A stretch of DNA of 64,000 nt from Macrostomum lignano (Eukaryota), in contig NIVC01002601.1 of NCBI GenBank assembly GCA_002269645.1, positions 93,950 through 157,949 of the forward strand, given 5' to 3'. Position 1 is the first letter of the stretch; each line of letters begins with the position of its first letter. A program made the translations under genes and the position numbers. The notes under the pieces were generated by a model. It had not been told where the DNA came from. It made no database searches and saw only the letters and a program-made list of their open reading frames with translations. This document shows positions 16,833-64,000 of this stretch, piece after piece.

Positions 16833-16837
16833 CTCAC

Positions 16838-17607
16838 CTTCCAGTCGGACCTCCGCCGCCGCCACCGTTGCCGCTGCGCCCGCTGCGCGCCGCGGCGCTC
16901 CTGTCGGCATTGGCGATGGACGCAGTGGACGCCGCTCCGTGCCTTCGCCGGCGCTGGCCCAGCTTAGCCACGATAACCCCGTTGGTACCCACAATCAGAG
17001 CGAACGGCACGTAGGAGTAGATCAGAGAGTCCAGAGTGTGAAAGTGCCAGGACAAATGCTTGAATCGTTTGTCGGCATCGCAGAGCTGGCCGGGCTCGAT
17101 AATGACCAGCAGGTAGAGATTGCAGGCGGCCGAGAGAGCCCCGGCCACCAGGAGGGCAATGAGGCCGTTCCGCTGCTTGCACAGCACTCGCATGTCAAAC
17201 GGGCGCAGTACGCAGACCAGCCGTTCGCAGCACATCAAGCAGATGATCCAAACCGAATAGGTGCTCAGCCAGGTGTACAAGAACATTGGCGCTCGGCAGC
17301 CGAGCAGCGGCCGAATGTCAACGCAGGCGACGGTCATGAGCAGGTGGCGGAGGCAGCCCTGCACCAGGACGAGGGTGTCCACGATGCAGAGGCTGGTTAG
17401 GAGCAGAGCGGTGGAGCCGCGAGAGTCGTACATTCGACGAGACCAGAGCACGCTGGAGACGACATTGGCTGGGACGCCAATGACCAGAAACAGCAGGGGG
17501 TAGATTAACAGCAGGTAGCGGACCACCGCGTCTCCGTCTTGACCGTTGAAAATTGATGTATAGTTGGAACCCCGCTGTGAACAGTTTGGCAGCTTCATCT
17601 TGTCCAT
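16838..17607 (-). CDS. Class A (rhodopsin-like, peptide-receptor-type) GPCR, exon 1 (TM1-TM5)
   Basis: ACCATGG start at 17607; TM1 GVPAN, TM2 LCIVD, TM3 CERL, TM5 YSYVP; phase-2 donor AG|GTGAGG at 16837. Confidence 0.88.
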
Positions 17608-17879
17608 GGTGAACTTGATGCCGAGAAATTGAGTTGTCTCTGTGCTCAATGCCAGTGTTTGGACTGAGCCGGCGCTTTAATGCCCGGCATACCGGCTTGC
17701 TCGATTGGCTGTCCAAGGGAAGCGGTGGATTGCTGAGCAGTTGCGTAATTAATTTGTACTGAAGTTGTGCTAATTTTTACTGATAGTAGAGTATTTAGCA
17801 AATTTTGTTTCGTGAGGGGCTTGTCTCGTAGTTTAGTTTTTCCGTGCCCTGCGGAGACACTGAGCACTCCGTCCGGAAG

Positions 17880-20775: not shown

Positions 20776-20794
20776 ACCAAGCCCGGCTACGCAC

Positions 20795-21589
20795 CTCCGC
20801 ATATGTCGCCAGGGTCGGGCCTCCCGAAGTCGAACCGGTGTCTCTCGCCGTACCACTGCAGCACCAGCTGCCTGCCAGCCTGCCGCCAGTCCCACCCGCT
20901 GGTGTCCTCCGCCGGCCTCTTCGCGATATTCTGCCCAACGCTGGCGTCGTTGAAGTCCTCGGCTGGGCGATGCTGCAGCCTCCCCGACTGGCTGAGCAAC
21001 TCGGCCCAGCTCTGCGCCAGCCGGTCCAAAGACTTCGATCGGCGAAGCTCCGGAGCTCCGTGCCTCCTGCGCAGCTCGTTGTGCTGCTTGGCCACCTCGT
21101 CAGCGAATGTCTCTCTAAGCTCGGCGTCGTCTTCGCCGCCGCCGTCATTGCCAGACACCGTCGGCGGAGCGGCAAAATTTCGACGAAATCGAGTCGGCTG
21201 GATGATCATCTCCTGGCCGATGTCGGGGCGCGCCGGCTGGGAGCCGCCGTCCTGACTAGTCGTGGTCTCCTTCGACAGCTGGTAGCGACTTCCGTCCGGC
21301 CTGGCGAAGGTCACCGTCACCGTCACGGTCTTCTCGCCGTTCACAATTCGAGTTTTCGTGGCTTTGCCAACCGGCCGGTCACTCGGATCGGCCGGGTCGG
21401 GTTCCTGGCCGCCTCCTTGGCTGATGACTGACTGCTGGGGCTGCTGCGGCTGCTGCGGCTGCTGCTTGATGTACTGCTGTGGCTGCTGCGGCTGCTGCTT
21501 GATGTACTGCTGCGGCTGCTGCGGCTGCTGCTTGATGTACTGCTGCGGCTGCTGCGGCTGCTGCTGCTGCTGCGAGCTTTGGCCGCCCA
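20795..21589 (-). CDS. Double-CAP protein, exon 3 (Q-rich linker and start of CAP domain 2)
   Basis: Acceptor AACAG| at 21590, phase 1; HNELRRRHGAP, RLQH, GQNIA, WYGE; donor G|GTGCGT at 20794. Confidence 0.85.
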
Positions 21590-21689
21590 CTGTTCGTGAC
21601 AAGGGACTGGATAATGCTCCACCTGTCCATTCTTTTCATCTGCAGTCTCACTCCATCTTTATCTATAGTCTCTCTTACCCATCTCATCT

Positions 21690-27664: not shown

Positions 27665-30600
27665 TCAATTAACTGAGAATTATCTATCAATTAACTGAGG
27701 ATTATCTATCAATTAACTGAGGATTATATATCAATGAACTGAGGATTATCTATCAATTAACTGAGGATTATCTATCAATTAACTGAGAATTATCTATCAA
27801 TTAACTGAGGATTATCTATCAATTAACTGAGGATTATCTATCAATTAACTGAGGATTATCTATCAATTAACTGAGGATTATCTATCAATTAACTGAGGAT
27901 TATCTATCAATTAACTGAGGATTATATATCAATGAACTGAGGATTATCTATCAATTAACTGAGGATTATCTATCAATTAACTGAGAATTATCTATCAATT
28001 AACTGAGGATTATCTATCAATTAACTGAGGATTATCTATCAATTAACTGAGGATTATCTATCAATTAACTGAGGATTATCTATCAATTAACTGAGGATTA
28101 TCTATCAATTAACTGAGGATTATATATCAATTAACTGAGGATTATATATCAATTAACTGAGGATTATCTATCAATTAACTGAGGATTATCTATCAATTAA
28201 CTGAGGATTATATATCAATTAACTGAGGATTATCTATAAATTAACTGAGGATTATCTATCAATTAACTGAGGATTATATATCAATTAACTGAGGATTATC
28301 TATCAATTAACTGAGGATTATATATCAATTAACTGAGGATTATATATCAATGAACTGAGGATTATCTATAAATTAACCGAGGATTATATATCAATTAACT
28401 GAGGATTATCGATCAATTAACTGGGGATTATCTATCAACTAACTGATGATTATCTATCAATTAACTGAGGATTATATATCAATTAACTGAGGATTATATA
28501 TCAATTAACTGAGGATTATCGATCAATTAACTGGGGATTATCTATCAACTAACTGATGATTATCTATCAATTAACTGAGGATTATATATCAATTAACTGA
28601 GGATTATATATCAATTAACTGAGGATTATCTATCAATTAACTGAGGATTATCTATCAATTAACTGAGGATTATCTATCAATTAACTGAGGATTATATATC
28701 AATGAACTGAGGATTATATATCAATGAACTGAGGATTATCTATCAATTAACCGAGGATTATATATCAATTAACTGAGGATTATCGATCAATTAACTGGGG
28801 ATTATCGGTCAACTAACTGATGATTATCTATCAATTAACTGAGGATTATATATCAATTAACTGAGGATTATATATCAATTAACTGAGGATTATCTATCAA
28901 TTAACTGAGGATTATATATCAATTAACTGAGGATTATATATCAATTAACTGAGGATTATCTATCAATTAACTGAGGATTATATATCAATGAACTGAGGAT
29001 TATATATCAATGAACTGAGGATTATCTATCAATTAACTGAGGATTATCTATCAATTAACTGAGGATTATATATCAATGAACTGAGGATTATATATCAATG
29101 AACTGAGGATTATCTATCAATTAACTGAGGATTATCTATCAATTAACTGAGGATTATCTATCAATTAACTGAGGATTATATATCAATTAACTGAGGATTA
29201 TATATCAATTAACTGAGGATTATATATCAATTAACTGAGGATTATATATCAATTAACTGAGAATTATCTATCAATTAACTGAGGATTATCTATCAATTAA
29301 CTGAGGATTATCTATCAATTAACTGAGGATTATATATCTATTAACTGAGGATTATATATCAATTAACTGAGGATTATATATCAATTAACTGAGGATTATC
29401 TATCAATTAACTGAGGATTATCTATCAATTAACTGAGGATTATCTATCAATTAACTGAGGATTATATATCTATTAACTGAGGATTATCTATCAATTAACT
29501 GAGGATTATCTATCAATTAACTGAGGATTATCTATCAATTAACTGAGGATTATCTATCAATTAACTGAGGATTATATATCAATGAACTGAGGATTATCTA
29601 TCAATTAACTGAGGATTATATATCAATGAACTGAGGATTATCTATCAATTAACTGAGGATTATCTATCAATTAACTGAGAATTATCTATCAATTAACTGA
29701 GGATTATCGAACAACTAATTGAGGATTATATATCAATCAACTGAGGATTATCTATCAATTAACTGAGGATTATCTATCAATTAACTGAGGATTATCTATC
29801 AATTAACTGAGGATTATCTATCAATTAACTGAGGATTATATATCAATGAACTGAGGATTATCTATCAATTAACTGAGGATTATCTATCAATTAACTGAGA
29901 ATTATCTATCAATTAACTGAGGATTATCTATCAATTAACTGAGGATTATCTATCAATTAACTGAGGATTATCTATCAATTAACTGAGGATTATCTATCAA
30001 TTAACTGAGGATTATCTATCAATTAACTGAGGATTATATATCAATTAACTGAGGATTATATATCAATTAACTGAGGATTATCTATCAATTAACTGAGGAT
30101 TATCTATCAATTAACTGAGGATTATATATCAATTAACTGAGGATTATCTATAAATTAACTGAGGATTATCTATCAATTAACTGAGGATTATATATCAATT
30201 AACTGAGGATTATCTATCAATTAACTGAGGATTATATATCAATTAACTGAGGATTATATATCAATGAACTGAGGATTATCTATAAATTAACCGAGGATTA
30301 TATATCAATTAACTGAGGATTATCGATCAATTAACTGGGGATTATCTATCAACTAACTGATGATTATCTATCAATTAACTGAGGATTATATATCAATTAA
30401 CTGAGGATTATATATCAATTAACTGAGGATTATCTATCAATTAACTGAGGATTATCTATCAATTAACTGAGGATTATCTATCAATTAACTGAGGATTATA
30501 TATCAATGAACTGAGGATTATATATCAATGAACTGAGGATTATCTATCAATTAACCGAGGATTATATATCAATTAACTGAGGATTATCGATCAATTAACT

Positions 30601-32025
30601 GGGGATTATCGGTCAACTAACTGATGATTATCTATCAATTAACTGAGGATTATCTATCAATTAACTGAGGATTATATATCAATTAACTGAGGATTATCTA
30701 TCAATTAACTGAGGATTATATATCAATTAACTGAGGATTATATATCAATTAACTGAGGATTATCTATCAATTAACTGAGGATTATATATCAATGAACTGA
30801 GGATTATATATCAATGAACTGAGGATTATCTATCAATTAACTGAGGATTATCTATCAATTAACTGAGGATTATATATCAATGAACTGAGGATTATATATC
30901 AATGAACTGAGGATTATCTATCAATTAACTGAGGATTATCTATCAATTAACTGAGGATTATCTATCAATTAACTGAGGATTATATATCAATTAACTGAGG
31001 ATTATATATCAATTAACTGAGGATTATATATCAATTAACTGAGGATTATATATCAATTAACTGAGAATTATCTATCAATTAACTGAGGATTATCTATCAA
31101 TTAACTGAGGATTATCTATCAATTAACTGAGGATTATATATCTATTAACTGAGGATTATATATCAATTAACTGAGGATTATATATCAATTAACTGAGGAT
31201 TATCTATCAATTAACTGAGGATTATCTATCAATTAACTGAGGATTATCTATCAATTAACTGAGGATTATATATCTATTAACTGAGGATTATCTATCAATT
31301 AACTGAGGATTATCTATCAATTAACTGAGGATTATCTATCAATTAACTGAGGATTGTCTATCAATTAACTGAGGATTATCTATCAATTAACTGAGGATTA
31401 TCTATCAATTAACTAACTGAGGATTATCTATCAATTAACTGAGGATTATCGAACAACTAACTGAGGATTATCGAACAACTAATTGAGGATTATATATCAA
31501 TCAACTGAGGATTATCTATCAATTAACTGAGGATTATATATCAATTAACTGAGGATTATCTATCAATTAAGTGAGGATTATCTATCAATTAACTGAGGAT
31601 TATCTATCAATTAACTGAGGATTATCTATCAATTAACTGAGGATTGTCTATCAATTAACTGAGGATTATCTATCAATTAACTGAGGATTATCTATCAATT
31701 AACTGAGGATTATCTATCAATTAACTGAGGATTATCGATCAACTAACTAACTGGGGATCATCGATCAACTAACTAACTGGGGATCATCGATCAACTAACT
31801 GAGGATTATCTATAAATTAACTGAGGATTATCTATCAATTAACTGAGGATTGTCTATCAATTAACTGAGGATTATCTATCAATTAACTGAGGATTATCTA
31901 TCAATTAACTGAGGTCTATCTATCAATTAACTGAGGATTATCTATCAATTAACTGAGGATTATCTATCAATTAACTGAGGATTATATATCAATTAACTGA
32001 GGATTATCTATCAATCAACCACTTA
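27665..32025. repeat. 22-bp satellite array (TCAATTAACTGAGGATTATCTA), about 4.4 kb
   Basis: About 198 units, with variant units recurring at a fixed 1804-bp offset. Confidence 0.98.
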
Positions 32026-35863: not shown

Positions 35864-35996
35864 AGTCGGCGTAGCGTACTTTAAGTAGAAAAAATCGGAC
35901 AAAAAAATAATTCAGCTTACGGCTCGCGGCTGAAGCGCAGAACTGTTGCCCTTGCTAGAGCCAGCTGGTGTGTTCCACCTAATTTCACTTTGCCAT

Positions 35997-36105
35997 GCCG
36001 ACGGTCTCCTACTGCGAAGACTCATAATTTTGCATGGTAAGACACCGCGTGGATCCAATTGAGCGATCTACTCAATTTTTGACAAGCCGCGCTTCCGCGG
36101 CTGCC
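35997..36105 (+). ncRNA. Spliced-leader (SL) RNA gene
   Basis: About 40-nt leader ending in ATG (36034-36036), then a GTAAG donor; stem-loop II GTGGATC/GATCTAC (36049-36071); Sm site AATTTTTG (36074-36081); 3' hairpin AGCCGCG-CTTC-CGCGGCT (36085-36102). Confidence 0.88.
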
Positions 36106-36500
36106 TAACAAAGCCTAAATTAATTGATTATTAATAATTATCCGTGTGTACAATAAATAATGATTATTCATTCGCCCTCGAGTCGCACCAGCAGCATCAA
36201 GAGACACATAATACAGCGAGCGCATCGCGGTGTGCAGTACACAGTGCAGGCTCGATCTCTTGGATCGATTTGCCATAATGAAATGTATTTTTTAGATCAA
36301 TTGCTCTTCTATGACTATATAGGAGTACATGTACAATTGTACAACTTTTTTATGGGATGGCGCTAGTTAAAATTAAAAAGTCGAACTGCACTGCACTTGC
36401 GTTGAGCTAGCTATTGGTTGATAATGTCAATCACCACCAACTGTTGCTCTTATATATGAGACGAGACGCCCCGTAATTAAGCGTACTACCTATTAGGTAT

Positions 36501-36759
36501 CAGTGGTGGCGCCGGGGGGGGGGGGGGGCAGAGGGTGCTGCTGCCCCCGGGCGACCTCCTACCTACCCTCCTGGGGGGTGGTGACTTACATGTACCTCCC
36601 ATCCCTCCGTGGTCTGACCCACAATAATTTCTTTAGTACGAGCTCGTTATATGCGTTTTTGTGAGATTTTATGCGATGCTCTAAAAATTCGCCGGCGAAG
36701 GGGGGGTGACCACCCAACAACCACCCCCTCTAATCGGAGTTGGTGCTGCGCCGCCACTA
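36501..36759. mobile_element. Small MITE-like insertion between the SL and 5S genes
   Basis: Inverted ends CAGTGGTGGCGC ... GCGCCGCCACTA and a G-run; no TSD found. Confidence 0.4.
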
Positions 36760-36819: not shown

Positions 36820-36939
36820 GGCAACGGCCATACCACGTTGAAAACACCGGTTCTCGTCTGATCACCGAAGTTAAGCAACGTTGGGTTTGGTTAGTACTTG
36901 GATGGGTGACCGCCTGGGAATACCAAATGCCGTTGTCTT
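36820..36939 (+). rRNA. 5S rRNA: 5S rRNA gene
   Basis: 120-nt canonical sequence (GGCCATACCACG...GATCACCGAAGTTAAGC...TAGTACTTGGATGGGTGACCGCCTGGGAATAC); helix I GGCAACGGC pairs with GCCGTTGTC. Confidence 0.97.
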
Positions 36940-36943
36940 TTTT
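36938..36943 (+). terminator. Pol III terminator (T6) of the 5S gene
   Basis: TTTTTT directly after helix I. Confidence 0.9.
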
Positions 36944-37319
36944 GTGAATTCTACATTAAAAATGATGTGTACCGTGTACGTAAAATGTTCCATCTATTAA
37001 CTAGACTTTTTACAAACCTCTTACAGACTTTTTACGAGAAGGTCGGTTTTTTATGTTGATTGAATTGAGAATCATTTATAAGCGTACCGTACTTTTAAAT
37101 CGTTGTTGATCTCATTATTTTAATATCTGATTTAATAATTTAGAAAAAAAAATTGATTTAACTGATTAACTTATCAGTTATAATTATAATGAAAACAAAT
37201 CTAGTCTTTCTTGAGAAAATATAAGCATTCTAAAATATGTACGACATTTTGCTAATTTTTCTACTGTTAGTAGCTAAAGTAGCCCTCACAAGATTAATAT
37301 GTTGAGACACGTCAACTTA

Positions 37320-37390
37320 AGAACATTCTAGAATTTTCTTAACGCATTACAATTTGGAATATTCTGGAAGGTCAGAGCAAGTCTATTTAA
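37320..37390 (+). promoter_or_regulatory. Two heat-shock elements plus TATA box of the small HSP gene
   Basis: aGAAcaTTCtaGAAttTTCt (four inverted nGAAn units, 37320-37339); gGAAtaTTCtgGAAg (three units, 37356-37370); TATTTAA at 37384-37390. Confidence 0.88.
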
Positions 37391-37473
37391 GCTAGAAAGC
37401 ACATCGTGTTTAGAAGTTAAGTTTTCACCGAACTGTTCAAATCAGCAATTATAATACGCCAGTCAACAACAGC

Positions 37474-38322
37474 ATGTCTCTCTGGCTAGCGCCTAGCAAC
37501 GTCTATACTCCATTCTCGCATTCGCTGCCTTTGCTGGCAGCTCTAAGCGAGCTGGACGACGCCCTGCTGCCCCACCACGACCCTCTGGTGCACCGGCTGA
37601 GGAGCCGCGGGCCGAAGCGGCCGCGCCAGTGGACTCGGTCGGTGGACCTGCGAGGCTTCGAGCCCAGCGAGGTGTCGGTGAAGCGAGACGGCTGCAAGAT
37701 GCGGATAGCGGCACGCCACGAGGACGGCGAAGATGTCACTGAGGTCAAGCGAACCATCGACGTGCCAGAAGACGTTGATGTTGAGAAGCTTAGCAGCGGA
37801 TTTACTAGAGAAGGAATTCTTCTACTGCAGGCGCCGTTCAAGGAGGAGCTTCGGGACCAGCAGCAGCAGCAATTGCAGAAGCAGAAGACGGAGAACTCAG
37901 TGTGGGATGAGCTGCGCGAGTTACTGAGAGCGCCGGACATCAGCCAGGACTCCATGGGCCACGTCGAAGATGTCGACGGGGGCGGCAAGCGATTCTGCGC
38001 CGAGCTGTCCGTGCGCGAGTTCAAGCCGGAGGAGATTCGCGTCAGACAGCAGGGCGACTGCGTGCTGGTTGAGGCGGAGCACAAGGAGGAGGCCGGCGGG
38101 CAGCGGGTGTACAAGAAGCTGGAGCGAATCTTCCAGCTGCCGGACGGCACCAAGCTGGACCAGGTGGCGAGCAAGCTCAGTCACGACGGCCGGCTGACCA
38201 TTCTGGCGCCGTTCGAGGCTCCGCCAGCCCAGGAGAAGCCGCATGTGAAGGACTTGCCAATGGAGACTGAACAGCAGCCGCCAGCTCCAGTGGTCGATGG
38301 TGATGGTCAAACCGCACCGTGA
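37474..38322 (+). CDS. hsp20: Small heat-shock protein with two alpha-crystallin domains (flatworm p40/Tsp36-type), intronless, 282 aa
   Basis: Two ACDs (VDLRGFEPSEVSV...SSGFTREGILLLQAP and LSVREFKPEEIRV...SKLSHDGRLTILAP); upstream HSEs. Confidence 0.94.
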   Translation: MSLWLAPSNVYTPFSHSLPLLAALSELDDALLPHHDPLVHRLRSRGPKRPRQWTRSVDLRGFEPSEVSVKRDGCKMRIAARHEDGEDVTEVKRTIDVPEDVDVEKLSSGFTREGILLLQAPFKEELRDQQQQQLQKQKTENSVWDELRELLRAPDISQDSMGHVEDVDGGGKRFCAELSVREFKPEEIRVRQQGDCVLVEAEHKEEAGGQRVYKKLERIFQLPDGTKLDQVASKLSHDGRLTILAPFEAPPAQEKPHVKDLPMETEQQPPAPVVDGDGQTAP

Positions 38323-53958: not shown

Positions 53959-54139
53959 GTAAACTCGATCGCCTTCCAGAGTCACGGACGGACAAGAAAT
54001 TAATTTGGGTTTTACAATTACTTGTGTGCTTTACTGATTCAATAAGAAGCCTATGCTCAAGTACTAGCGGAGGTTAACTAAGCTTTCCGCATAATATCTA
54101 TAAATTTGAAGGTCATTTGGCTCTCACTGGAAGTCAAAT

Positions 54140-54400
54140 TTTCACTGACAGTCAATTGTCATTGACAGTCAAATTGGTCACTGACAGTCAAATTGGTCAT
54201 TGACAGTCAAATTGGTCACTGTTAGTCAAATTGGTCACTGTTAGTCAAATTGGTCACTGTTAGTCAAATTGGTCACTGTTAGTCAAATTGGTCACTGACA
54301 GTCAAATTGGTCACTGTTAGTCAAATTGGTCACTGTTAGTCAAATTGGTCACTGATAGTCAAATTGGTCACTGATAGTCAAATTGGTCACTGACAGTCAG
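54140..54400. repeat. 19-bp minisatellite (GGTCACTGTTAGTCAAATT)
   Basis: GGTCA at 54195, 54214 and 54233. Confidence 0.92.
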
Positions 54401-54647
54401 CTGTGTTTAAGATCAGTCTTTGAAAGGCAGAAAAGCATTACAACTCTGTCGAATACTTCAAAGTTATACAGTCGATTCGGTGTTTCCCATAATTATTAAC
54501 AGCAGAGTTTGGGAGAACTTTTGCTTTAAAAATGCAACAGAAAGGATGCTAAAAAGGTGGCTAGCATTGTATAAACATAAAACTACAAGCCAGAATGGTT
54601 CAGAAGAAAATATTCGCACCAGATAAAACCTTTAGCTCGTAAACTAG

Positions 54648-55284
54648 TTAATTGGAATAGCTCGGCTTCAAAGCGGCCAGCAGGTCCCGATCAGCCGAGC
54701 CGAGCTCCTGCTGGCTAAAGTTGAACAGCTCCAGTTTGTCGCTAGGAAGCCGCTGTCTGAGCTCGTCAAAGAACGGGTGCGCCAGAGCTCGCAGCGGTGC
54801 CAACCGGCTGCCAGGCTGGTAGGCGAGCAGGCGGCACAGCAGGTCCAGCAACTCGGGCGGTGTACCAATCGGGAAGCTCAACTGCGGGTCAGGGGCCACC
54901 TGTGGCAGCGGGAACTTCTCATATACTGGATTCATAGCCAGCAGGTCGCGCTTGGTTGGCGTGCCCAGCACCCGGATGATGGCCACCAGCTGGTCCAGCG
55001 AGTTGTTAGCCATGAACAGGCAGTGGCCGATGCACAGCTCGGCAAGCACGCAGCCGACTGACCACAGGTCGATGGCACAGCTGTAATTAGTAGAGCCGAA
55101 CAGCAGCTCGGGAGCTCGGTAGTACCTAGAGCTGATGTACGCCACTCCGGCTGCGGCGGCCGCGTTGGCGCCGCTGCCTTCGGCAAGTTCGCCGGGCAGC
55201 GGCAGCTCCTTGGCCGAGCCGAAGTCGCACAGGCGCAGGCGGCAGTCGGATTCGTCAACGAGAACGTTCGGGCTCTTGATGTCC
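54648..55284 (-). CDS. GSK3: GSK3-like kinase, last exon; 387 aa without and 448 aa with the cassette exon
   Basis: (R)DIKSPNVLVD, LCDFGSAKEL, VAYISSRYYRAPELLFGS, IDLWSVGCVLAEL, ALAHPFFDELR; stop TAA at 54648-54650. Confidence 0.92.
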
Positions 55285-55384
55285 CTTGGGAAGGAAAGTA
55301 ATCCGGTTCCAAGACACTATAATGCTGCAGTCACGTGTTAGGCCTTGTTTTTAAGGCCTAACGCCAGCCCCACATGTCCCCTTT

Positions 55385-56385
55385 TTTTTCTGGGCCAGCT
55401 TCCCAGATCCTCAGTTGCTGGGCCAGCCTCCCAGATTCCCAGTTGCTGGCCCTGCCTCACAGGTCCTCAGTTGCTGGGCCAGCATCCCAGATCTCCAGTT
55501 GCTGGGCCAGCCGGCCAGATCCCCAGTTGCTGGGCCAGCATCCCAGATCCCCAGTTGCTGGGCCAGCCTCCCAGATCCTCAGTTGCTGGGCCAGCCTCCA
55601 AGATCCCCATTTGCTGGGCCAGCATCCCAGATCCCCAGTTGCTGGGCCAGCCTCCCAGATCCTCAGTTGCTGGGCCAGCCTCCAAGATCCCCAGTTGCTG
55701 GGCCAGCCTCCAAGATCCCCAGTTGCTGGGCCGGCCGGCCAGATACCAGTTGCTGGGCCTGCCTCTCAGGTCCTTAGTTGCTGGGCCAGCCTCCCAGACT
55801 CCCAGTTTCTAAGTCTGACGCTGTTCCAGATGGTCATAGCTGCTCCGTCATCAGCCGCTCACCTGTGGCAGATGCGATGCGAATGCATATAATTGATAGC
55901 TCGCAGAAGCTGGTAGGCAAAGATTCGCACTTTGAGCATGGAAGGCAAAGTCTCAGCTTTCCTGTATCTTGCCAGCAAGTCTAACAGACTCTCCGGGAAG
56001 AGCTCAGTAACCAGGTGCAAATAGAGCTTCGGGCTCTTGATGTCCCTTGGGAAGGAAAGTAATCCGGTTCCAAGACACTATAATGCTGCAGTCACGTGTT
56101 AGGCCTTGTTTTTAAGGCCTAACGCCAGCCCCACATGTCCCCATTTTTTTCTGGGCCAGCTTCCCAGATCCTCAGTTGCTGGGCCAGCCTCCCAGATTCC
56201 CAGTTGCTGGGCCTGCCTCACAGGTCCTCAGTTGCTGGGCCAGCATCCCAGATCTCCAGTTGCTGGGCCAGCCGGCCAGATCCCCAGTTGCTGGGCCAGC
56301 ATCCCAGATCCGGCCAGATACCAGTTGCTGGGCCTGCCTCTCAGGTCCTTAGTTGCTGGGCCAGCCTCCCAGACTCCCAGTTTCT
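55385..56385. repeat. ~26-bp minisatellite (CCCAGATCCCCAGTTGCTGGGCCAGC) in both copies of the duplicated kinase intron
   Basis: Arrays at about 55385-55800 and 56150-56385. Confidence 0.9.
55863..56045 (-). CDS. GSK3: GSK3-like kinase, duplication-derived in-frame cassette exon (183 nt)
   Basis: Intact copied acceptor (56046) and donor (55862); reads DIKSP-KLYLHL...ICHR. Confidence 0.5.
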
Positions 56386-56437
56386 AAGTCTGACGCTGTT
56401 CCAGATGGTCATAGCTGCTCCGTCATCAGCCGCTCAC

Positions 56438-56805
56438 CTGTGGCAGATGCGATGCGAATGCATATAATTGATAGCTCGCAGAAGCTGGTAGGCAAAGATT
56501 CGCACTTTGAGCATGGAAGGCAAAGTCTCAGCTTTCCTGTATCTTGCCAGCAAGTCTAACAGACTCTCCGGGAAGAGCTCAGTAACCAGGTGCAAATAGA
56601 GCTTGCCCGGGTCCATCTTGCCCCGGCAGTAGTAGTGGTAGCGCAGTCGCACCAGATTCTCGTGCTCACCAAGTGCGTACAGAGTGCGCAGTTCCCGATT
56701 TTTGTAGCGCGGATCCTGCAGCACCCGCTTGAGAGCCACCGACTCGCCTGACTCGGACAGGCGGCCTCGGTACACGGAGCCGAACGTGCCGGATGCGATT
56801 GGCCC
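56438..56805 (-). CDS. GSK3: GSK3-like kinase, exon 2 (subdomains I-VIa)
   Basis: Acceptor TCATCAAG| at 56806; ASGTFGSVY, VALKRVLQDPRYKNREL, ICHR; phase-2 donor AG|GTGAGC. Confidence 0.9.
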
Positions 56806-57142
56806 CTTGATGAATGAAGTTTAGAGCGCCTGCGCTATATGGTGATGCAGTTACTCGTAATACCAGGCGCCAAACGATCGTATTCCATTTTATTTTATTT
56901 TATCCAATTCAAATTGGCGCCAAACACTGGGACTGCTAAATTGTCGTTTATAGTATTCCGAAAACAGCTTTAAAAACAAACACAATTAATAAAATATTTA
57001 GCTGTGTTAACTGCTTAACGATTGTTTATTTAACAATACCGTTTTGGCGCCAAATTTGAACTAGATTGAATTTTAACGAACGCCAAAACGAGAAAAATTC
57101 CATTTTTTAGAAAGTACAGAAGAAAATTGAGTCTCTAGTTAA

Positions 57143-57906
57143 CAGGGGTCAGCAAACTCCGGCCCGCTCAGTGCTTATATCTCTTCTCAGCGCTCTTCTA
57201 TCTAATCTCCTCTCTCCTCTCCTCTCCTCTACTCTACTCTTTCCTTTCTCCTCTCCTCTTCTCTCCTCTTCTCTACTCTACTCTACTCTCTCCCCTCTAC
57301 TCTCCCCTCTCCTCTCCCCTCTCCTCTCCTCTCCTCTTCTCTCCTCTCCTCTTCTCTACTCTCCTCTTCTCTACTCTACTCTCTCCCCTCTACTCTCCCT
57401 CTCCTCTCCCCTCTCCTCTCCTCTCCTCTTCTCTCCTCTCCTCTTCTCTACTCTACTCTCTCCCCTCTCCTCTCCCCTCTCCTCTCCCCTCTCCTCTCTC
57501 CTCTCCTCTCCTCTTCTCTCTTATCCTCTTCTCTCCTCTCCTCTTCTCTACTCTACTTTACTCTCTCCCCTCTCCTCTCCTCCCTGCTCCTCTCCTCTAC
57601 TCTACTCTCTCCCTCTCTCCTCTCCTCTCCTCTCCTTTCCTCTCTCCCTTCTCCTCTCCCTTCTCCTCTCCTCTCCTCTCCTCTCCTCTCCTCTCCTCTC
57701 CTCTCCTCTCTCCTCTTCTCTCCTCTCCCAATTCATCTCTTCTTGTTCTTTCCTCTCGTCTTCTCTTTTCTCGTTAATTCCCTCGCTTCAAGCCTCTTTC
57801 TCCCTATCTCCCCCTTCTTTATTCCCTCCTCTTCCCTCCTCCGGTCCGCAGTTATGACCTAGGTTCTCTATCTGGCCCTTGTGGTAAAAACGTTGGCCAA
57901 CCTCCG
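57143..57906 (-). mobile_element. hAT-like MITE with a ~650-bp expanded CT tract, in kinase intron 1
   Basis: CAGGGGTCAGCAAACTCCGGCCCG start and decayed ...AAAAACGTTGGCCAACCTCCG end; CTCTAGT at 57133-57139 and 57907-57913. Confidence 0.7.
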
Positions 57907-58008
57907 CTCTAGTATTTCATGTCGTTATTCGGGCAGTTTTACGCATTGTAAATGCACAACTCGACTCAATGCGAAATCGTACACTACTCGTACATGCAAG
58001 TCGCTTAC

Positions 58009-58167
58009 CGTAGACACAGTCAGTTCAATTTGTCTATAAGACTGTCTCTGGATCGGATCAAAAGCCGGACAAGCCATGACGGAAACTTGCAACTGTTTTT
58101 TTTGTCGGCTGTGCGACGAGCGCGTCTTCTCGCCGTCGAATTGGTCGTCATAGCTGATTAAGGACAT
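58009..58167 (-). CDS. GSK3: GSK3-like kinase, exon 1 (nested antisense in CFAP157 intron 2)
   Basis: MSLISY...LQVSVMACPAFDPIQRQSYRQIELTVST resembles the GSK3 pre-kinase segment; phase-0 donor ACG|GTAAGC at 58008. Confidence 0.72.
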
Positions 58168-58859
58168 TTCTTGCTTCTTGTTTGCGAGTCCCAAGTCTTG
58201 GTTCAACAAAAAAGTGCCTATTTAACTTCGATTTGGTTCAGCAGGCGTTCTATTGAAGCCAATTGTTGGGTCCTGGCGTAGAATTTTATAACTTTGGGGT
58301 GGTTGGGTTTGGGGGGTTTGTTTTGGGTTTTATGACCCCCCTTCCTCAAACACCCATTTATAGTGAATGTACAATGCAATGTACATTTAGAAATAGCTTC
58401 TTAGTACATCTCGTCTAACAAGTTTTTCTGTACAGTTTTCACGTTGATTGATTGTAAATTTCTTTGTAATTAATTATCTGCAATACCTCACCAGAGCAGA
58501 GCTTGCTGCCTAGTCAGTTTTACATCAATTTTGAAAACCCCCTCTGAGTCTGTCATTGGAATACAGACTGCTACAAACTATACATGTACAATAGTTTAAC
58601 TGAAGTGAACTGAAGTTTTTTTTAAGTGCCACTTGGTCTGGTTTTTCACTGGACAGACAATACGAGCGTTGTAATGCGATGTAAAAGATGGTTATTTTGG
58701 TTGATGCTGCTCGGCAGGGAAGAGCAAAAGGTCGCGGCTCCCGACCGGTACTGGCCCCGGGTCGCCCACCATCACTAAACCGAAAAATCACAACTCCGAA
58801 AAGCATTGTCCATCATAGGCTCGATATATCATAGCACCGAAAGTGCTAGCGGGTTTGTC

Positions 58860-59010
58860 GTTTGTGATATTTACGGTTTGTGATATTTCGGGTTTTTGAT
58901 ATTTCGGGTTTGTGATATTTCGGGTTTGTGATATTTCGAGTTTGTGATATTTCGGGTTTGTGATATTTCGGGTTTGTGATATTTCGGGTTTGTGATATTT
59001 CGGGTTTGTG
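58860..59010. repeat. 16-bp tandem repeat (CGGGTTTGTGATATTT)
   Basis: Period 16 at 58921/58937; about 9 units. Confidence 0.9.
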
Positions 59011-59114
59011 ATGCCCTCTGGCCCATTCTATGTAACCTCCAAAGACGCAGCCTCTGCATTGATAATAATCTTTTTAAGAAACAATTTTTTTATCTCCTTT
59101 TTTTTTAATCGCAG

Positions 59115-59828
59115 ACAATCCGCAGCCTCGCCGACGCGTGCCGCGACCGCGACACTCAACTAATCGACATGGAGGAGCGAGCCGAGGCTGGCGACTCCGT
59201 GCAGTCCGAGCACAGCCTGCTCGGCGCCCAGGCCGAGTCACAGTCCCAGGAGCTAGTTGCTATGCGCACCGAGACATCCAACCAGCTAACCGAACTGGAC
59301 CGCCTGGCCGAGCTGGCCCGCCAGACCGCGCGCATCCACAGGCGGTTCCAGCGCCTGCTGCGCCAGTCGGAACGCGCCGTGTCTGACGCATTTTCAACTT
59401 TAACGCCGGACGAAGAGATGACAGAAGCTGAGGCGGTCATACTCCGTCGCAAAATGTTGGTGAGCCTGCTGGAACTGCTGCACATGGCGGCCAGGGTCGG
59501 CCTGGGCCCTGAACCGGCCAGTCTCGGCCGCGCTGGCCAGCCGGGCACGGTTGAGCGGAAACCGTTGCGAGCGTCGTCAGCTTCCGGCGGTGCGCCTTCG
59601 TCCGCTGGCAAACGCGGCAGCGGCGGCGGCCTGGTCAGCGAGCGCCTCAGCGAACTCGGCCTGGCCCCGGCAGCCGCCGCCACAAAGCGCAGCGGCGGAG
59701 GCGGCGGTGGCGTCTCCTCCCGGACGGAGTTCGTGGCCGAGAAGCTGGCCACCCAGCTGCCGCCAGGCGGCCTGCTGGAGCCGCTGATCCTTCGCCGCGG
59801 CCGTCCAGTGCCCGCTGGCATCTTCTAG
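59115..59828 (+). CDS. CFAP157: CFAP157, exon 3; full CDS 1581 nt, 526 aa
   Basis: Acceptor TTTTTTAATCGCAG| in phase 0 gives TIRSLADACRDRD...RRKMLVSLLELL; stop TAG at 59826-59828. Confidence 0.82.
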   Translation, partial: TIRSLADACRDRDTQLIDMEERAEAGDSVQSEHSLLGAQAESQSQELVAMRTETSNQLTELDRLAELARQTARIHRRFQRLLRQSERAVSDAFSTLTPDEEMTEAEAVILRRKMLVSLLELLHMAARVGLGPEPASLGRAGQPGTVERKPLRASSASGGAPSSAGKRGSGGGLVSERLSELGLAPAAAATKRSGGGGGGVSSRTEFVAEKLATQLPPGGLLEPLILRRGRPVPAGIF

Positions 59829-61020
59829 AGGAAGGACTACAGTAGATGGGCTTCTCGTTTAATTTTCTTGCAAAAAGCGCTTAGTCTACTTTCTTTTGGG
59901 CATATGAGCGCGCATGGCTATCTAAATTTATCTGAATTCTCCGTTAGAATTTCAAATTTCAGTAAGAGAAGAAAAGAAACAGATAAAGAGGCTGGATAAA
60001 TTAACCGACTTGATGTCGTTGTCGTCACAATGTACATTTTGGGGAAGACAATAAATTGGGGGTAGTTTTTTATTTCACCTCAGCGCGCAAATTTATTTAA
60101 CAAGACGCCAAACAGACGCCCAAATCGAAAGTAGTATTTTCTATTATTTGGCCTTGATGACTAAATTCCAACTGTAACACACTTCAATCCTGTTTGCTCC
60201 ATTGTTTCCAATGGTTTTCTTTTCATTTTTTTACAAAACTCTTAGACCTCCCGTCTCTCCGTGTGTCCGTCACGTTTCATTTTGCTTGCTTTTTTGTCGA
60301 CTTGTCCAAATGGGCCTTTTTTATTTTGTTATTTTCGTGTGAAAAAAATTCAAAAGTAACGAATTTGCTTGCGTCACTAAGATCAAGAGTGGAGGCTGTT
60401 ACGCGTATATATTCTAACGTATTTTGTTTTCGTATTTTTTACTCCGTCCTTTCTAACTATATTACTTCTATCATTCCGTTAAGTAGTACGTACGGTATGA
60501 TGCAGATGTATACTTTAATATGTGCTTGTCAGAGAGAGAACTGCCACATTCAAGCAGATTTCAAACTATAATTTGTCAATAATTTTGGGTTTTAAATGTC
60601 AGAAGCACCACCAGGTATAATAATTACAGTTTGCCTCACTGAAATGAATGCTTCATTCACTTTAATCACTGTCACGGAAAAATATAGCTGCATGCATGGA
60701 TGAGGCCCTGGAATATAATGGGAACACGATAACTGGCTGTGGCAATTTGATTGCTCCAAATTAACAGATAAACATAATAACCCTAACCTAAACCTTATCC
60801 TAAACTTGAGTTTATAAAACTCAACCTTAACTAAAGCCCTCAGCCCTAACCTAAAACCCAAACCCCAGCCTAAACCCCAACGCTCACCCTACTAACCTAA
60901 AGTGTCAATTGTCGTGGACCCAAAAATAATTTGTTTGCGTAATATCTATAATGGCGAATTACTTTTAGGCAGCCTAATTTTATTGACTCATTAATTTTTC
61001 AAATTTATCAATCTATAGAT

Positions 61021-61926
61021 TTATGACGCGGACAGAAAGTTGGTGTTAATCAAGTAGTGCTCGTAGCAGCAGGCCCTGACGATGCCCGACAGGCCTTCAA
61101 AGAATACCGACTGCGGATTCCTGTGCGAGTGCCAGACGCGAAAGCCGAGATCAAAGAGGCGCCGCCACACTCGCAGAAATTTCGCATAGTCCGAGCCTTG
61201 GCCGCGCATCTCGGCAGTGTGAGACTCGAACATCAGCTGCTTGACCCGCCTCAGGCAGCCTTCACTGATGGCCCGGTCAAGACTGTCCCACTCCCAGTAT
61301 TCGATGTCCACTTTGACGATGTCCACTTTGCCGTCACTGAAGCCGAGATCCGCGAACAGCTCGCACAGTGTGCGCATCCTCCAGCCTGAGCTCCCCTCGC
61401 TGCTCTTGTTGCCCCAGAGGCCCACCTGGTAGAACCAGGCGGACCGGCTTCGCTGGTGATCCGGCACCGGCATGCTGGGGTCGAACATGTACACCTTGCA
61501 GCCGAACCGGCCCGACAGTTCGTCGTCGTAGCTCCAGACGTTGTTGATGCCGAACGAGAACGCCACGCAGGACTTGCCGATGTTGAAGGGCTCGCTGATG
61601 CAGACATCCCAGCCTCCATCCAGAGCGTCTCCAACTCGGACACTGGTTGGACAGGCGATCTGTAGCTCGTCAGTCACGTTGAAGTAAAGATTCTCAAGCT
61701 CAACAGCAGACAGCTGATTTAAGTTTATATTGCTTAGCGCGGGACCTTTGTGCGACCTCGGGGTCGGAGCTGCAGCTTTCGACTGGCCAACATTAATGTT
61801 TCCAATTCCTGCGATTCTGTGACTAATAGGAAAGTTGTTGAATATGCGAATGACAGCGACTGACAGAAGCAGCAGCAGCACTATTGCTGCAGAGAACAGC
61901 AACTGAAAGCGTTGCACCAGAGGCAT
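61021..61926 (-). CDS. METTL24: Methyltransferase-like protein 24 family (Methyltransf_22-type), intronless, 301 aa with an N-terminal signal anchor
   Basis: Hydrophobic N-terminus; DGGWDVC, CVAFSFGINNVWSYD, GCKVYMFDPS, VDIVKVDIEYWEW, VKQLMFESH, CCYE motifs. ATG taken at 61926; the track's 62019 start is a GTG. Confidence 0.85.
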   Translation of the reverse strand: MPLVQRFQLLFSAAIVLLLLLSVAVIRIFNNFPISHRIAGIGNINVGQSKAAAPTPRSHKGPALSNINLNQLSAVELENLYFNVTDELQIACPTSVRVGDALDGGWDVCISEPFNIGKSCVAFSFGINNVWSYDDELSGRFGCKVYMFDPSMPVPDHQRSRSAWFYQVGLWGNKSSEGSSGWRMRTLCELFADLGFSDGKVDIVKVDIEYWEWDSLDRAISEGCLRRVKQLMFESHTAEMRGQGSDYAKFLRVWRRLFDLGFRVWHSHRNPQSVFFEGLSGIVRACCYEHYLINTNFLSAS

Positions 61927-62394
61927 TTTCGAGTGAATGATAAATTTCAAAGAAAGCTTTCCGAATGATGCACTATTCAATCGAACGTATTTGTAGTGAA
62001 CAGGACTTGGATTTTTCACCTTGTTTATTCAGGCAACGTGGTATCCCCAGAGCCTATAATGACCTGAAACCAAATAACTTCTCAAACCCGATCCATTTAC
62101 GAGCTAAATTGGAAATTGAATAAATAAGATCGCAAATGAATTGTCAGTGGTACAGCTGAGAACATAATCGTTAGAATCCTGCTTTTTCTTTTGACTTTTG
62201 CCGTTGCAACGTAAGTGATATGGCGCCTGCATGAGTATGTAACGTGAACAGAGTGTTGGAATTACGAGCATAGTACTCGTAGTAGCAGTCTATACGGTAT
62301 ATTCTGCACTGGATTATTTGAAGTAATGGATTTTAGATATATTTAGACGGCAAACTTTCTAAGGACACAGGGCACTAACTTAATTAGGCAACAG

Positions 62395-63065
62395 ACTAGC
62401 TATCTGAGAGGACATGACCTCAGACAAATTTATGCAACAGGCTATCTGAGGACATATGACCTGAGAGACAAATTTATGCTACAGGCTATCTGAGGACATG
62501 ACCTCAGAGACAAATTTACGCTACAGGCTATCTGAGGACATGACCTCAGAGACAAATTTATGCTACAGGCTATCTGAGGACATGACCTCAGAGACAAATT
62601 TATGCAACAGGCTATCTGAGGACATATGACCTGAGAGACAAATTTATGCTACAGGCTATCTGAGGACATGACCTCAGAGACAAATTTATGCTACAGGCTA
62701 TCTGAGGACATGACCTCAGAGACAAATTTATGCAACAGGCTATCTGCATGAGGACATGACCTCAGAGACAAATTTATTCTACAGGCTATCTGAGGACATG
62801 ACCTCAGAGACAAATTTATGCAACAGGCTATCTGCATGAGGACATGACCTCAGAGACAAATTTATGCAACAGGCTATCTGAGGACATGACCTCAGAGACA
62901 ATTTATGCAACAGGCTATCTGAGGACATGACCTCAGAGACAATTTATGCAACAGGCTATCTGAGGACATGACCTCAGAGACAATTTATGCAACAGGCTAT
63001 CTGAGGACATGACCTCAGAGACAAATTTATGCAACAGGCTATCTGAGGACATGACCTCAGACAAC
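62395..63065. repeat. 42-bp minisatellite with an internal palindrome
   Basis: GGCTA at 62526 and 62568; each unit holds TCTGAGG-ACATGA-CCTCAGA. Confidence 0.95.
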
Positions 63066-64000
63066 CAATGCAGTCAACAAATTTTGTCAGAAAAAATATT
63101 TGAAGACACGGAAAAGCAAATGCAAAGGCATGTACATTCTCTTCGCCTTGAATTTGTTAATCGCAAGATATCCCTTACCACTGAGCGGCTCTGCCCCTGT
63201 CAAATGGGGTTTTACCGTAGACAATACGAGTAGTAATAATACTATAATTGATTACACCTGCCCTAGTTGCAGGGCCAGATGTGCAACCAACAGCTCAGCC
63301 GCAGCTATTGCGCGGCGCATCTTGAAGGCTGCGTACACTGTCACAATCTAAGGCCTTGATTCACTGTACATATGAAGGTGATCCGACACACCATTATCTA
63401 CATGTATTTATAGAGCTATTATCTGTATGGAGTACATGTGAAATAATGCAACGCAAAGCATTATTAGATTTTGCAATAAAACATAGACGAATCAGGAGAC
63501 GCGGTGATACGCTTTCTGAGAAAGCGCTGCTGCTGTCTTTCGCTAAATTCTCCTCATGGAATCTGTGCCTTACAATCGCGGCTGATGAAGAACGCGCGTG
63601 TCTCAATAATTCAAATTCTTATAAATCATTTGTCTACAATATTTTTTGATTACATGCATGACCGCATTTTTTGCATTTTGCAATTTTTGTGTGAGTACAG
63701 CCGAAATAAGCTGTATATGTACATGTACATGTAAGTCATATTGCAGCTGTATGCATGGCCGTACCCCATCAAAACCAGCCATCCAACCATATCCCGGAGC
63801 GATCCAAAAATACTTGTGGTTTTTTATATATTCCTTGCCACAGGTGAGTTAATTAGTCGGCCAAAGTGGCGACAAAGGACACTAGACTTTCCGGAATAAC
63901 TTCTACATGTAGGGTGGTCCTTGATGGCGGCGACTAAATGGACATATCGAAGAAAAGAAAGTTGATGGCTCCATCATGTAGAGATTTTTTATTCGGGACT

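What the first reader, a model, noticed from the sequence alone, without database searches (positions are those of the whole stretch)
35997..36105. Structurally complete SL RNA gene with an apparently variant leader
Seen: leader GCCGACGGTCTCCTACTGCGAAGACTCATAATTTTGCATG, a GTAAG donor, two perfect downstream stem-loops and an Sm site. Established: flatworm SLs end in AUG. From memory (unverified), the commonly used M. lignano leader is CCGTAAAGACGGTCTCTTACTGCGAAGACTCAATTTATTGCATG. This copy would lack TAAAG, carry one T>C change in the arm that pairs with the donor region, and replace a 6-nt block (ATTTAT to TAATTT) just before TGCATG while keeping the intron part intact. Inference: a second SL class, which could serve particular tissues or downstream operon genes as nematode SL2 does.
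Basis: partly seen in the sequence, partly recalled or inferred. Interest (0 to 1): 0.8.

Follow-up and report, generated by a model that had tools for sequence, protein, structure and literature searches.

The report
Divergent spliced-leader RNA gene in Macrostomum
This is a real, structurally intact extra copy of the flatworm Macrostomum lignano's spliced-leader RNA gene with a leader unlike the only one published, but these tools cannot show whether any mRNA receives it.

Summary
Window 35997-36105 (+) carries the quoted leader, a GTAAG donor, two hairpins and an Sm site. The window is Macrostomum lignano assembly Mlig_3_7, contig NIVC01002601.1.

Two environmental macrostomid SL RNA genes I recovered carry the same exon. 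The window copy is therefore a true intraspecific variant.

Corrections:
- All canonical genes share CTTTGCC at the start site. This favours a 45-nt leader starting at 35992, with no deletion and 9 mismatches: two blocks plus one single site.
- Two other near-identical M. lignano contigs carry the same locus. Their differences cluster inside the gene and include two leader positions.
- A solitary 5S rRNA gene and a heat-shock HSP20 gene lie downstream. The 5S-HSP20 linkage is conserved in another species.

My reading is a diverged, single-locus SL RNA paralogue that looks competent for trans-splicing. It is probably a minor, unspecialised donor or one drifting towards decay. An SL2-like specialised class is untested, and parasitic flatworm data argue against it. 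Use on mRNAs could not be tested here.

The parts
35992..36105 (+). Variant SL RNA gene. The likely transcript is about 114 nt; the 3' end is not defined experimentally.
   Evidence: Aligns end to end with canonical macrostomid SL RNA genes L011 and L012. Folds into the three-hairpin SL RNA shape, -35.7 kcal/mol, z = -2.3.
35988..35994 (+). CTTTGCC start-site context shared with canonical SL RNA genes
   Evidence: Identical 7-mer at -4 to +3 in L011, L012 and the window.
35992..36036 (+). Leader exon, 45 nt if it starts at the canonical position. It ends in ATG (36034-36036).
   Evidence: Ungapped alignment to the canonical 45-mer gives 9 mismatches at nt 4, 6-8, 18, 34-36 and 38. It contains ATG at nt 4-6 and an in-frame TAA at nt 34-36.
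36037..36041 (+). 5' splice donor GTAAG
   Evidence: It is the same donor as reported for the M. lignano SL RNA (PMC8629364) and as in L011 and L012.
36003..36046 (+). Stem-loop I. Leader GGTCTCCTAC pairs with donor region GTAAGACACC, and there is an inner GCGAAG/UUUUGC stem.
   Evidence: The C at 36009 makes a C.A mismatch; copy L001 has T there, giving a U-A pair.
36047..36052 (+). Intron GCGTGG, which can pair with leader CCATGC (35993-35998) to extend stem I
   Evidence: MFE folds of all three copies. The alignment shows C-G in the variants against A-U in the canonical genes at one pair.
36057..36077 (+). Stem-loop II (AATTGAG / CTCAATT, 7 bp). An alternative is GTGGATC (36049-55) / GATCTAC (36065-71).
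36074..36082 (+). Sm-binding-type site AAUUUUUGA
   Evidence: It fits RAU(n)GR. Its first 4 nt overlap the 7-bp version of stem II.
36085..36102 (+). Stem-loop III (AGCCGCG cttc CGCGGCT)
   Evidence: The homologous hairpin AGCCC...GGGCT is present in L011 and L012.
36820..36938 (+). Solitary 5S rRNA gene followed by a T-run, 715 nt downstream of the SL gene
   Evidence: Rfam RF00001, 117.4 bits, E = 2.9e-25. It matches the published M. lignano 5S primers (PMC5704211).
37474..38322 (+). HSP20 (alpha-crystallin) gene. It served as the handle for finding the source contig and the two sister copies.
   Evidence: Pfam PF00011, 5.2e-23, two stretches. P0001 is 100% identical and is carried on three contigs of GCA_002269645.1.

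Best explanation
This is a genuine, diverged paralogue of the Macrostomum lignano spliced-leader RNA gene. It sits at a single locus beside a solitary 5S rRNA gene. The locus is present in three near-identical homeologous or allelic copies in the assembly.

The inferred mechanism is that of any SL RNA. A transcript of about 110 nt is made, presumably by Pol II. It binds Sm proteins at AAUUUUUGA between two 3' hairpins. Its GUAAG donor is held in stem-loop I against the leader. The spliceosome transfers the leader, ending in AUG, onto 3' acceptor sites of pre-mRNAs.

The gene keeps every element needed for this, so it looks competent. Most likely it is a low-use, unspecialised donor that has escaped the homogenisation keeping the major copies identical, and its leader is drifting. 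It is not an SL2-like dedicated class.

Shown: the sequence, the structure, the difference from the published SL, and the copy-to-copy variation. Inferred: transcription and any use in trans-splicing.
For: Source and published SL:
- The window is M. lignano Mlig_3_7.
- Only one SL is published for this species.

The gene is intact:
- The 21-nt core, TGCATG|GTAAGACACCG, the Sm site and the 3' hairpin are all present.
- The three copies fold at -35.7 to -39.9 kcal/mol, at least as stable as the canonical genes L011 and L012 at about -33.4.

The leader changes are confined to two blocks and do not damage the fold:
- Changing nt 38 from A to U turns an A.A mismatch into A-U.
- C8-G replaces A8-U.
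- CCAUGC/GCGUGG adds a 6-bp helix.

Other points:
- The start-site context CTTTGCC is kept.
- The same two blocks appear on three contigs, which excludes a sequencing error.
- SNVs among the copies are concentrated in the transcribed 117 nt: 4 of 26 in 4.5 kb, Poisson P about 0.003. There is no SNV for 490 nt upstream or 155 nt downstream. Transcription-associated mutation or ectopic gene conversion would give this pattern.
- In parasitic flatworms, divergent SL-RNA paralogues with an intact AUG and donor are used, without specialisation.
Against: - I could obtain no transcript evidence.
- Published k-mer and read-based surveys report one SL. They searched for the canonical string and would miss a minor variant.
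- The canonical 45-nt exon is identical in M. lignano, M. cliftonense, M. hystrix and two environmental macrostomids. The variant exon differs at two positions among nearly identical copies, so purifying selection on it is not visible.
- The C at 36009 weakens stem I in two of the three copies.
- The 7-bp form of stem II covers part of the Sm site.
- The SNV-clustering test is post hoc.
- The extra helix has roughly a 5% chance of arising at random (my estimate).
- The canonical M. lignano intron was not available, so the apparent compensatory changes may be species differences rather than paralogue differences.
Confidence: 0.5

Rival explanations
1. It is a silent relic. An SL RNA gene copy, perhaps once part of an SL-5S unit, was stranded outside the homogenised gene set. 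It is no longer transcribed or used and is decaying neutrally.
For: - It is a single locus, against eight or more canonical copies.
- Only one SL is reported for the species.
- Two leader positions vary among copies whose flanks differ by about 0.5%.
- A stem I pair is broken in two copies.
- The two block changes could each be a single mutational event. For example, a 7-nt micro-inversion plus one substitution explains nt 33-39. The copy need not be old, so intact motifs need not imply selection.
Against: - The donor, AUG, Sm site, all three hairpins and the start-site context are intact.
- The changes avoid or improve base pairs.
- Neutral decay cannot by itself raise SNV density above that of the intergenic flanks.
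- The loci called pseudogenes in parasitic flatworms had lost the AUG or the donor. This one has not.
Confidence: 0.3
2. One reading: a second, functionally distinct SL class, serving particular tissues, conditions or downstream operon genes, like nematode SL2 or planarian SL3.
For: - The leader differs in two discrete blocks while the RNA fold is preserved.
- The locus context is old. The 5S-HSP20 linkage is kept in a species whose spacer DNA no longer aligns. If the SL copy is equally old, its preservation would imply selection.
- Planarians have several SL classes; a stem-cell-specific SL3 paper is listed in the references of PMC8629364.
Against: - There are no usage data.
- Divergent SL-RNA paralogues in 24 parasitic flatworms show no target specialisation.
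- The variant leader is polymorphic between copies.
- No variant-type leader appeared among the few environmental macrostomid hits: 3 metagenome contigs and 1 MAG contig, all canonical.
- Whether the gene exists upstream of the 5S gene in the other species could not be seen, because that contig breaks inside the 5S gene.
Confidence: 0.12
3. It is an artefact: a mis-assembled or mis-polished canonical SL RNA gene, or the 5' end of a trans-spliced mRNA mistaken for an SL RNA gene. The latter happened with the first published M. lignano 'SL RNA'.
For: - Mlig_3_7 is a redundant long-read assembly.
- Some of the copy-to-copy SNVs could be polishing noise from paralogous reads.
Against: - Both variant blocks are identical on three separate contigs.
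- The leader is followed by GTAAG, an Sm site and hairpins, not by an mRNA body.
- Block substitutions of 4-5 bases are not a typical consensus error.
Confidence: 0.03

Closest known systems
Canonical Macrostomum lignano SL RNA gene (109 bp, 8 copies in the deduplicated genome; Ustyantsev & Berezikov 2021, PMC8629364)
   Same: Same species, size class and architecture: leader at the 5' end in hairpin I, GTAAG donor, and an Sm-like site between two further hairpins. 36 of 45 leader bases are identical, including a 21-nt core and the terminal TGCATG.
   Different: The leader differs at 9-10 positions: nt 4-8 GTAAA>ATGCC, nt 18 T>C in two copies, and nt 33-38. It has an extra AUG near the 5' end and an in-frame UAA. 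It is a single locus rather than a multi-copy gene. The introns could not be compared.
Canonical SL RNA genes of two environmental macrostomids (L011, JGI contig Ga0302322_100095745; L012, contig JAGQZA010000190.1)
   Same: Same start-site context CTTTGCC, same donor region GTAAGACACCG, a shared GATCCAAT motif, a U-run Sm site and an AGCC...GGCT 3' hairpin.
   Different: Their exons are identical to the published SL. Their introns are 85% identical to each other but only about 70% identical to the window gene. Neither contig holds a 5S rRNA gene; L012 carries a U1 snRNA gene upstream of the SL RNA gene and L011 no recognised RNA gene.
Divergent SL-RNA paralogues and pseudogenes of parasitic flatworms (Calvelo et al. 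2025, PMC12582326)
   Same: Within-genome SL-RNA sequence variants occur alongside a dominant, concertedly evolving set. The conserved AUG-GU junction and an Sm-like motif are present.
   Different: Those variants were found from transcript evidence, whereas this one is known only from DNA. The loci called pseudogenes there lack the AUG or the donor, which this gene retains. The Sm site here fits the canonical RAU(n)GR, unlike those of the parasites.
Nematode SL1/5S rDNA unit and SL2 family (from general knowledge; SL2 specialisation also summarised in PMC12582326)
   Same: An SL RNA gene lies within 1 kb of a 5S rRNA gene, as in the C. elegans SL1-5S repeat. A second leader sequence exists in the same genome, as with SL2.
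   Different: Here it is a single SL-5S pair in the same orientation, not a tandem array. No evidence links the variant to operons.

Membership tests
Macrostomum / flatworm SL RNA gene | 5' leader homologous to the genus SL | tested here: met
   36/45 identical in ungapped alignment. The 21-nt core is exact and unique in the window.
Macrostomum / flatworm SL RNA gene | Leader ends in AUG and is followed directly by a GU donor | tested here: met
   ATG at 36034-36, GTAAG at 36037-41.
Macrostomum / flatworm SL RNA gene | Hairpin I pairs the leader with the donor region | tested here: met
   GGUCUCCUAC pairs with GUAAGACACC with two mismatches; one of them (C.C) also occurs in the canonical genes, and copy L001 has only that one..
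Macrostomum / flatworm SL RNA gene | Sm-binding site between two 3' hairpins | tested here: met
   AAUUUUUGA at 36074-82 lies between hairpins II and III. Caveat: the 7-bp form of hairpin II overlaps its first 4 nt.
Macrostomum / flatworm SL RNA gene | Leader found at the 5' end of mature mRNAs | not testable with these tools
   No access to M. lignano reads or transcripts. The protein-database route gave nothing. The few environmental transcripts carry the canonical SL.
Macrostomum / flatworm SL RNA gene | Transcribed as a small capped Sm-class RNA | not testable with these tools
   No expression data. No conserved upstream promoter element could be defined, even between the two canonical genes, beyond CTTTGCC.
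Major (published) M. lignano SL | Leader identical to CGGTCTCTTACTGCGAAGACTCAATTTATTGCATG | tested here: not met
   5-6 mismatches within those 35 nt in all three copies.
Specialised second SL class (nematode SL2-like, planarian SL3-like) | Leader sequence distinct from the major SL | tested here: met
Specialised second SL class (nematode SL2-like, planarian SL3-like) | Preferential use at downstream operon genes or in particular cells | not testable with these tools
   This needs RNA-seq reads. Parasitic flatworm paralogues show no such bias.
SL RNA pseudogene (criteria of PMC12582326) | Loss of the terminal AUG or of the splice donor | tested here: not met
   Both are intact in all three copies.
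SL RNA pseudogene (criteria of PMC12582326) | Negligible transcript evidence of trans-splicing | not testable with these tools
   No read data available.
Rfam SL families | Match to a curated SL covariance model | tested here: not met
   No SL family matched even at E <= 10. No Rfam family matched the canonical macrostomid SL RNA gene on L011 at E <= 0.01, or the one on L012 at gathering score, either. Rfam therefore appears to lack a model for this lineage.

The most novel reading that the evidence does not exclude
M. lignano expresses a second spliced leader from this locus. The variant SL RNA gene has been kept beside the 5S-HSP20 pair since before the split from the species represented by L004. 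It supplies a leader with its own mini-uORF (AUG...UAA) to a defined subset of mRNAs or conditions. That would make M. lignano a two-SL flatworm like planarians.
Probability: 0.1. Interest if true: 0.7.

Novelty: new member of a known kind. Interest (0 to 1): 0.4.

Why it matters
M. lignano is a transgenic flatworm model in which 30-39% of genes are reported as trans-spliced. All of its annotation pipelines trim and map reads using one leader string. If a second leader is used, some trans-splice sites and gene starts are being missed. It would also become possible to ask, in a tractable animal, whether SL paralogues specialise. If it is not used, the locus shows how an SL RNA copy behaves once it escapes concerted evolution. 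Either answer can be had in an afternoon from public reads.

Tried and rejected
1. Exact-protein look-ups of window ORFs found nothing. A homologue search was needed to locate the source contig.

2. I tried to find SL RNA genes or SL-bearing transcripts through artefactual ORFs that read across the gene in five frames. Nothing scored; such short ORFs are apparently not in the protein collection.

3. I considered searching for leader-encoded peptides on mRNAs and rejected it. The ATG frame of the variant has a stop. In addition, short-k-mer assemblies keep only about 20-30 nt of a shared leader, judging from L004 breaking 23 nt inside the 5S gene. Any match would therefore be 7-9 residues, which is indistinguishable from chance.

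4. I tried to reach the canonical M. lignano SL RNA gene by synteny with the Na/K-ATPase beta gene next to the L011 SL gene. No M. lignano hit was returned.

5. Pattern scans:
   - The viral collection was empty.
   - Metagenomes gave three contigs and the GTDB genomes one, all canonical.

6. Literature string searches for the variant block and for the intron start found nothing relevant.

7. A promoter comparison found no convincing shared element apart from CTTTGCC. A TAGTAG-like motif lies about 95-108 nt upstream in all three genes, but the evidence is too weak to use, and it is not visible upstream of the U1 gene in L012.

8. Rfam has no family that matches this gene, and none matched the canonical macrostomid genes on L011 (E <= 0.01) or L012 (gathering score).

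Full report
**What is there**

The features, in order, are:
- the leader GCCGACGGTCTCCTACTGCGAAGACTCATAATTTTGCATG;
- GTAAG at 36037-41;
- a hairpin AATTGAG/CTCAATT at 36057-63/36071-77;
- AAUUUUUGA at 36074-82;
- a hairpin AGCCGCG/CGCGGCT at 36085-91/36096-102.

The 21-nt core occurs once in the window and in none of 100 shuffles. A profile built from five macrostomid SL RNA genes finds no second copy in the 64 kb. Rfam has no matching SL family. It does call a complete 5S rRNA gene 715 nt downstream at 36820-36938 (117 bits).

**Source**

The ORF at 37474-38322 is an HSP20. Its annotated form (P0001) lies on three contigs of GCA_002269645.1, namely NIVC01002601.1, NIVC01003399.1 and NIVC01001104.1. 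NIVC is the M. lignano Mlig_3_7 assembly. The window is NIVC01002601.1. The published M. lignano 5S primers match the window's 5S gene.

**The published leader**

The 35-nt core is given in PMC8629364. PMC10468722 Table S3 gives the 45-nt form GCCGTAAAGACGGTCTCTTACTGCGAAGACTCAATTTATTGCATG for M. cliftonense and a 43-nt form without the first two bases for M. hystrix. A 2025 review of flatworm SL RNAs states that a single SL was identified in M. lignano. The variant strings occur in no relevant paper in the library. The window copy is therefore a real, unreported variant within the species. It is not another species' orthologue.

**Canonical genes from elsewhere**

A pattern scan allowing C or T at the polymorphic site gave the following:
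- two environmental transcripts with the canonical SL spliced to mRNA bodies (L009, L010);
- a canonical SL RNA gene on a JGI metagenome contig (L011, 615-722);
- another canonical SL RNA gene on a eukaryotic contig mis-binned into a Flavobacteriaceae MAG (L012, 1589-1697), with a U1 snRNA gene just upstream.

Both genes have the published exon, 45/45. Their introns are 85% identical to each other and about 70% identical to the window gene. The canonical exon is thus invariant across at least five macrostomid species, while the introns drift.

**Re-alignment of the leader**

L011, L012 and the window all have CTTTGCC spanning the start site. Without gaps, the window aligns from 35992 as GCCATGCCGACGGTCTCCTACTGCGAAGACTCATAATTTTGCATG. 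That is 45 nt with 9 mismatches, at nt 4, 6-8, 18, 34-36 and 38.

On this reading the leader carries an AUG at nt 4-6 and an in-frame UAA at nt 34-36. Being 3 nt from the cap, that AUG would probably be scanned past; this is an inference from general knowledge. The 3' block can be explained by a 7-nt micro-inversion plus one substitution.

**Structure**

All three M. lignano copies fold into the SL RNA shape at -35.7 to -39.9 kcal/mol, against about -33.4 for the canonical genes. The leader changes do not damage the fold:
- the A-to-U change at nt 38 turns a canonical A.A into A-U;
- leader C8 pairs with an intron G where the canonical genes have A-U;
- CCAUGC can pair with GCGUGG to lengthen stem I.

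These points suggest constraint, but they are weak. The sample has two lineages. By my estimate the extra helix has roughly a 5% chance expectation. The canonical M. lignano intron could not be obtained for comparison.

**The three copies**

Between 34.8 and 39.3 kb the three contigs differ at about 0.5% of sites. Of 26 SNVs, 4 fall in the 117-nt gene, along with a 2-nt indel. There is no SNV for 490 nt upstream or 155 nt downstream (Poisson P about 0.003, post hoc).

Two variable sites are in the leader. One is nt 18, C or T; T is the canonical state and restores a stem I pair. The other is nt 33, A or T. There is therefore no visible purifying selection on this leader, in contrast to the frozen canonical exon.

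A density above the intergenic background is not what simple decay predicts. It fits transcription-associated mutation or patchy conversion from paralogues. Both are inferences.

**Context**

- The HSP20 gene has textbook heat-shock elements (37321-38, 37356-69) and a TATA-like box.
- In another species (HSP20 73% identical; Logan runs SRR316284xx), the contig upstream of the HSP20 orthologue ends in the last 23 nt of a 5S gene. The spacer does not align with M. lignano.
- The 5S-HSP20 pairing is therefore old. Whether an SL gene lies beyond that 5S gene could not be seen.
- The main M. lignano 5S array is a tandem repeat with a unit of about 1.65 kb on chromosome MLI2. The window's 5S gene is a solitary copy outside that array.

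**Interpretation**

The gene is a bona fide SL RNA paralogue with every element needed to donate its leader. I put 0.5 on a transcribed, competent but minor and unspecialised donor whose leader is drifting. I put 0.3 on a silent relic, 0.12 on a specialised second class and 0.03 on artefact.

Three things argue against the SL2 analogy. Flatworm SL paralogues studied so far show no specialisation. The leader is polymorphic between copies. There are no usage data at all. The published M. lignano pipelines searched for the canonical string only, so they do not exclude a minor variant.

**What could not be done**

No tool gave access to M. lignano reads, transcripts or the rest of its genome. The comparison with the canonical M. 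lignano intron also remains open. Both are simple with public data.

Noticed in passing
window 36820-36944: A complete 5S rRNA gene with a T-run terminator lies 715 nt downstream of the SL gene on the same strand. It is the only 5S gene in the window, whereas the main M. lignano 5S genes form a ~1.65-kb tandem array. SL RNA / 5S linkage is classic in nematodes and protists but, to my knowledge, not described for Macrostomum.
   Followed up: partly
window 37321-38322; L004 1-1713: The HSP20 gene has two alpha-crystallin stretches, two perfect heat-shock elements and a TATA-like box. Its orthologue in another species (73% aa identity) is also preceded by a 5S gene, although the spacer is unalignable. 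The 5S-HSP20 pairing is therefore conserved.
   Followed up: partly
window 37432-37473: The annotated product P0001 (296 aa) starts 14 codons upstream of the ATG at a non-start codon (ACT). This looks like a 5'-partial or over-extended CDS in the GenBank annotation.
   Followed up: no
window 1-34800 and 54100-63100 (e.g. 27665-32019): The window is extraordinarily dense in minisatellites. There are about 25 distinct arrays with 12-54-bp units, plus several runs of 4-5-bp units. They include a 4.3-kb array of a 22-mer (GC 27%) and arrays that create long spurious ORFs on both strands.
   Followed up: no
window 36500-36730: Between the SL and 5S genes there is a 16-G run followed by G/C-rich complementary segments (GGGGGTGACCACCC...ACCACCCCC). 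The length of the G-run differs among the three copies.
   Followed up: no
L001/L002/L003 outside window ~29.8-39.7 kb: The three M. lignano contigs are nearly identical across the SL-5S-HSP20 core. On both sides they become unalignable or carry large insertions. Upstream SNVs group L001 with L002, while downstream SNVs show mixed patterns. This suggests recombination or structural change around the locus.
   Followed up: no
L012 (JAGQZA010000190.1) 1121-1697: A contig binned in a 'Flavobacteriaceae bacterium' MAG carries a metazoan U1 snRNA gene (152 bits) and a canonical Macrostomum-type SL RNA gene 300 nt apart. This is eukaryotic contamination of the MAG, and it shows U1-SL linkage in that macrostomid.
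   Followed up: partly
L011 (Ga0302322_100095745) 615-2922: On an environmental macrostomid contig, a canonical SL RNA gene lies about 1 kb upstream of a Na/K-ATPase beta-subunit gene (PF00287). No M. lignano orthologue was returned by the protein search.
   Followed up: partly
window 16834-17649 (-), 20787-21602 (-), 61021-62019 (-): Other coding exons in the window: a rhodopsin-family GPCR, a CAP/SCP-domain protein preceded by a Q/P-rich repeat, and a Methyltransf_22-domain protein.
   Followed up: no
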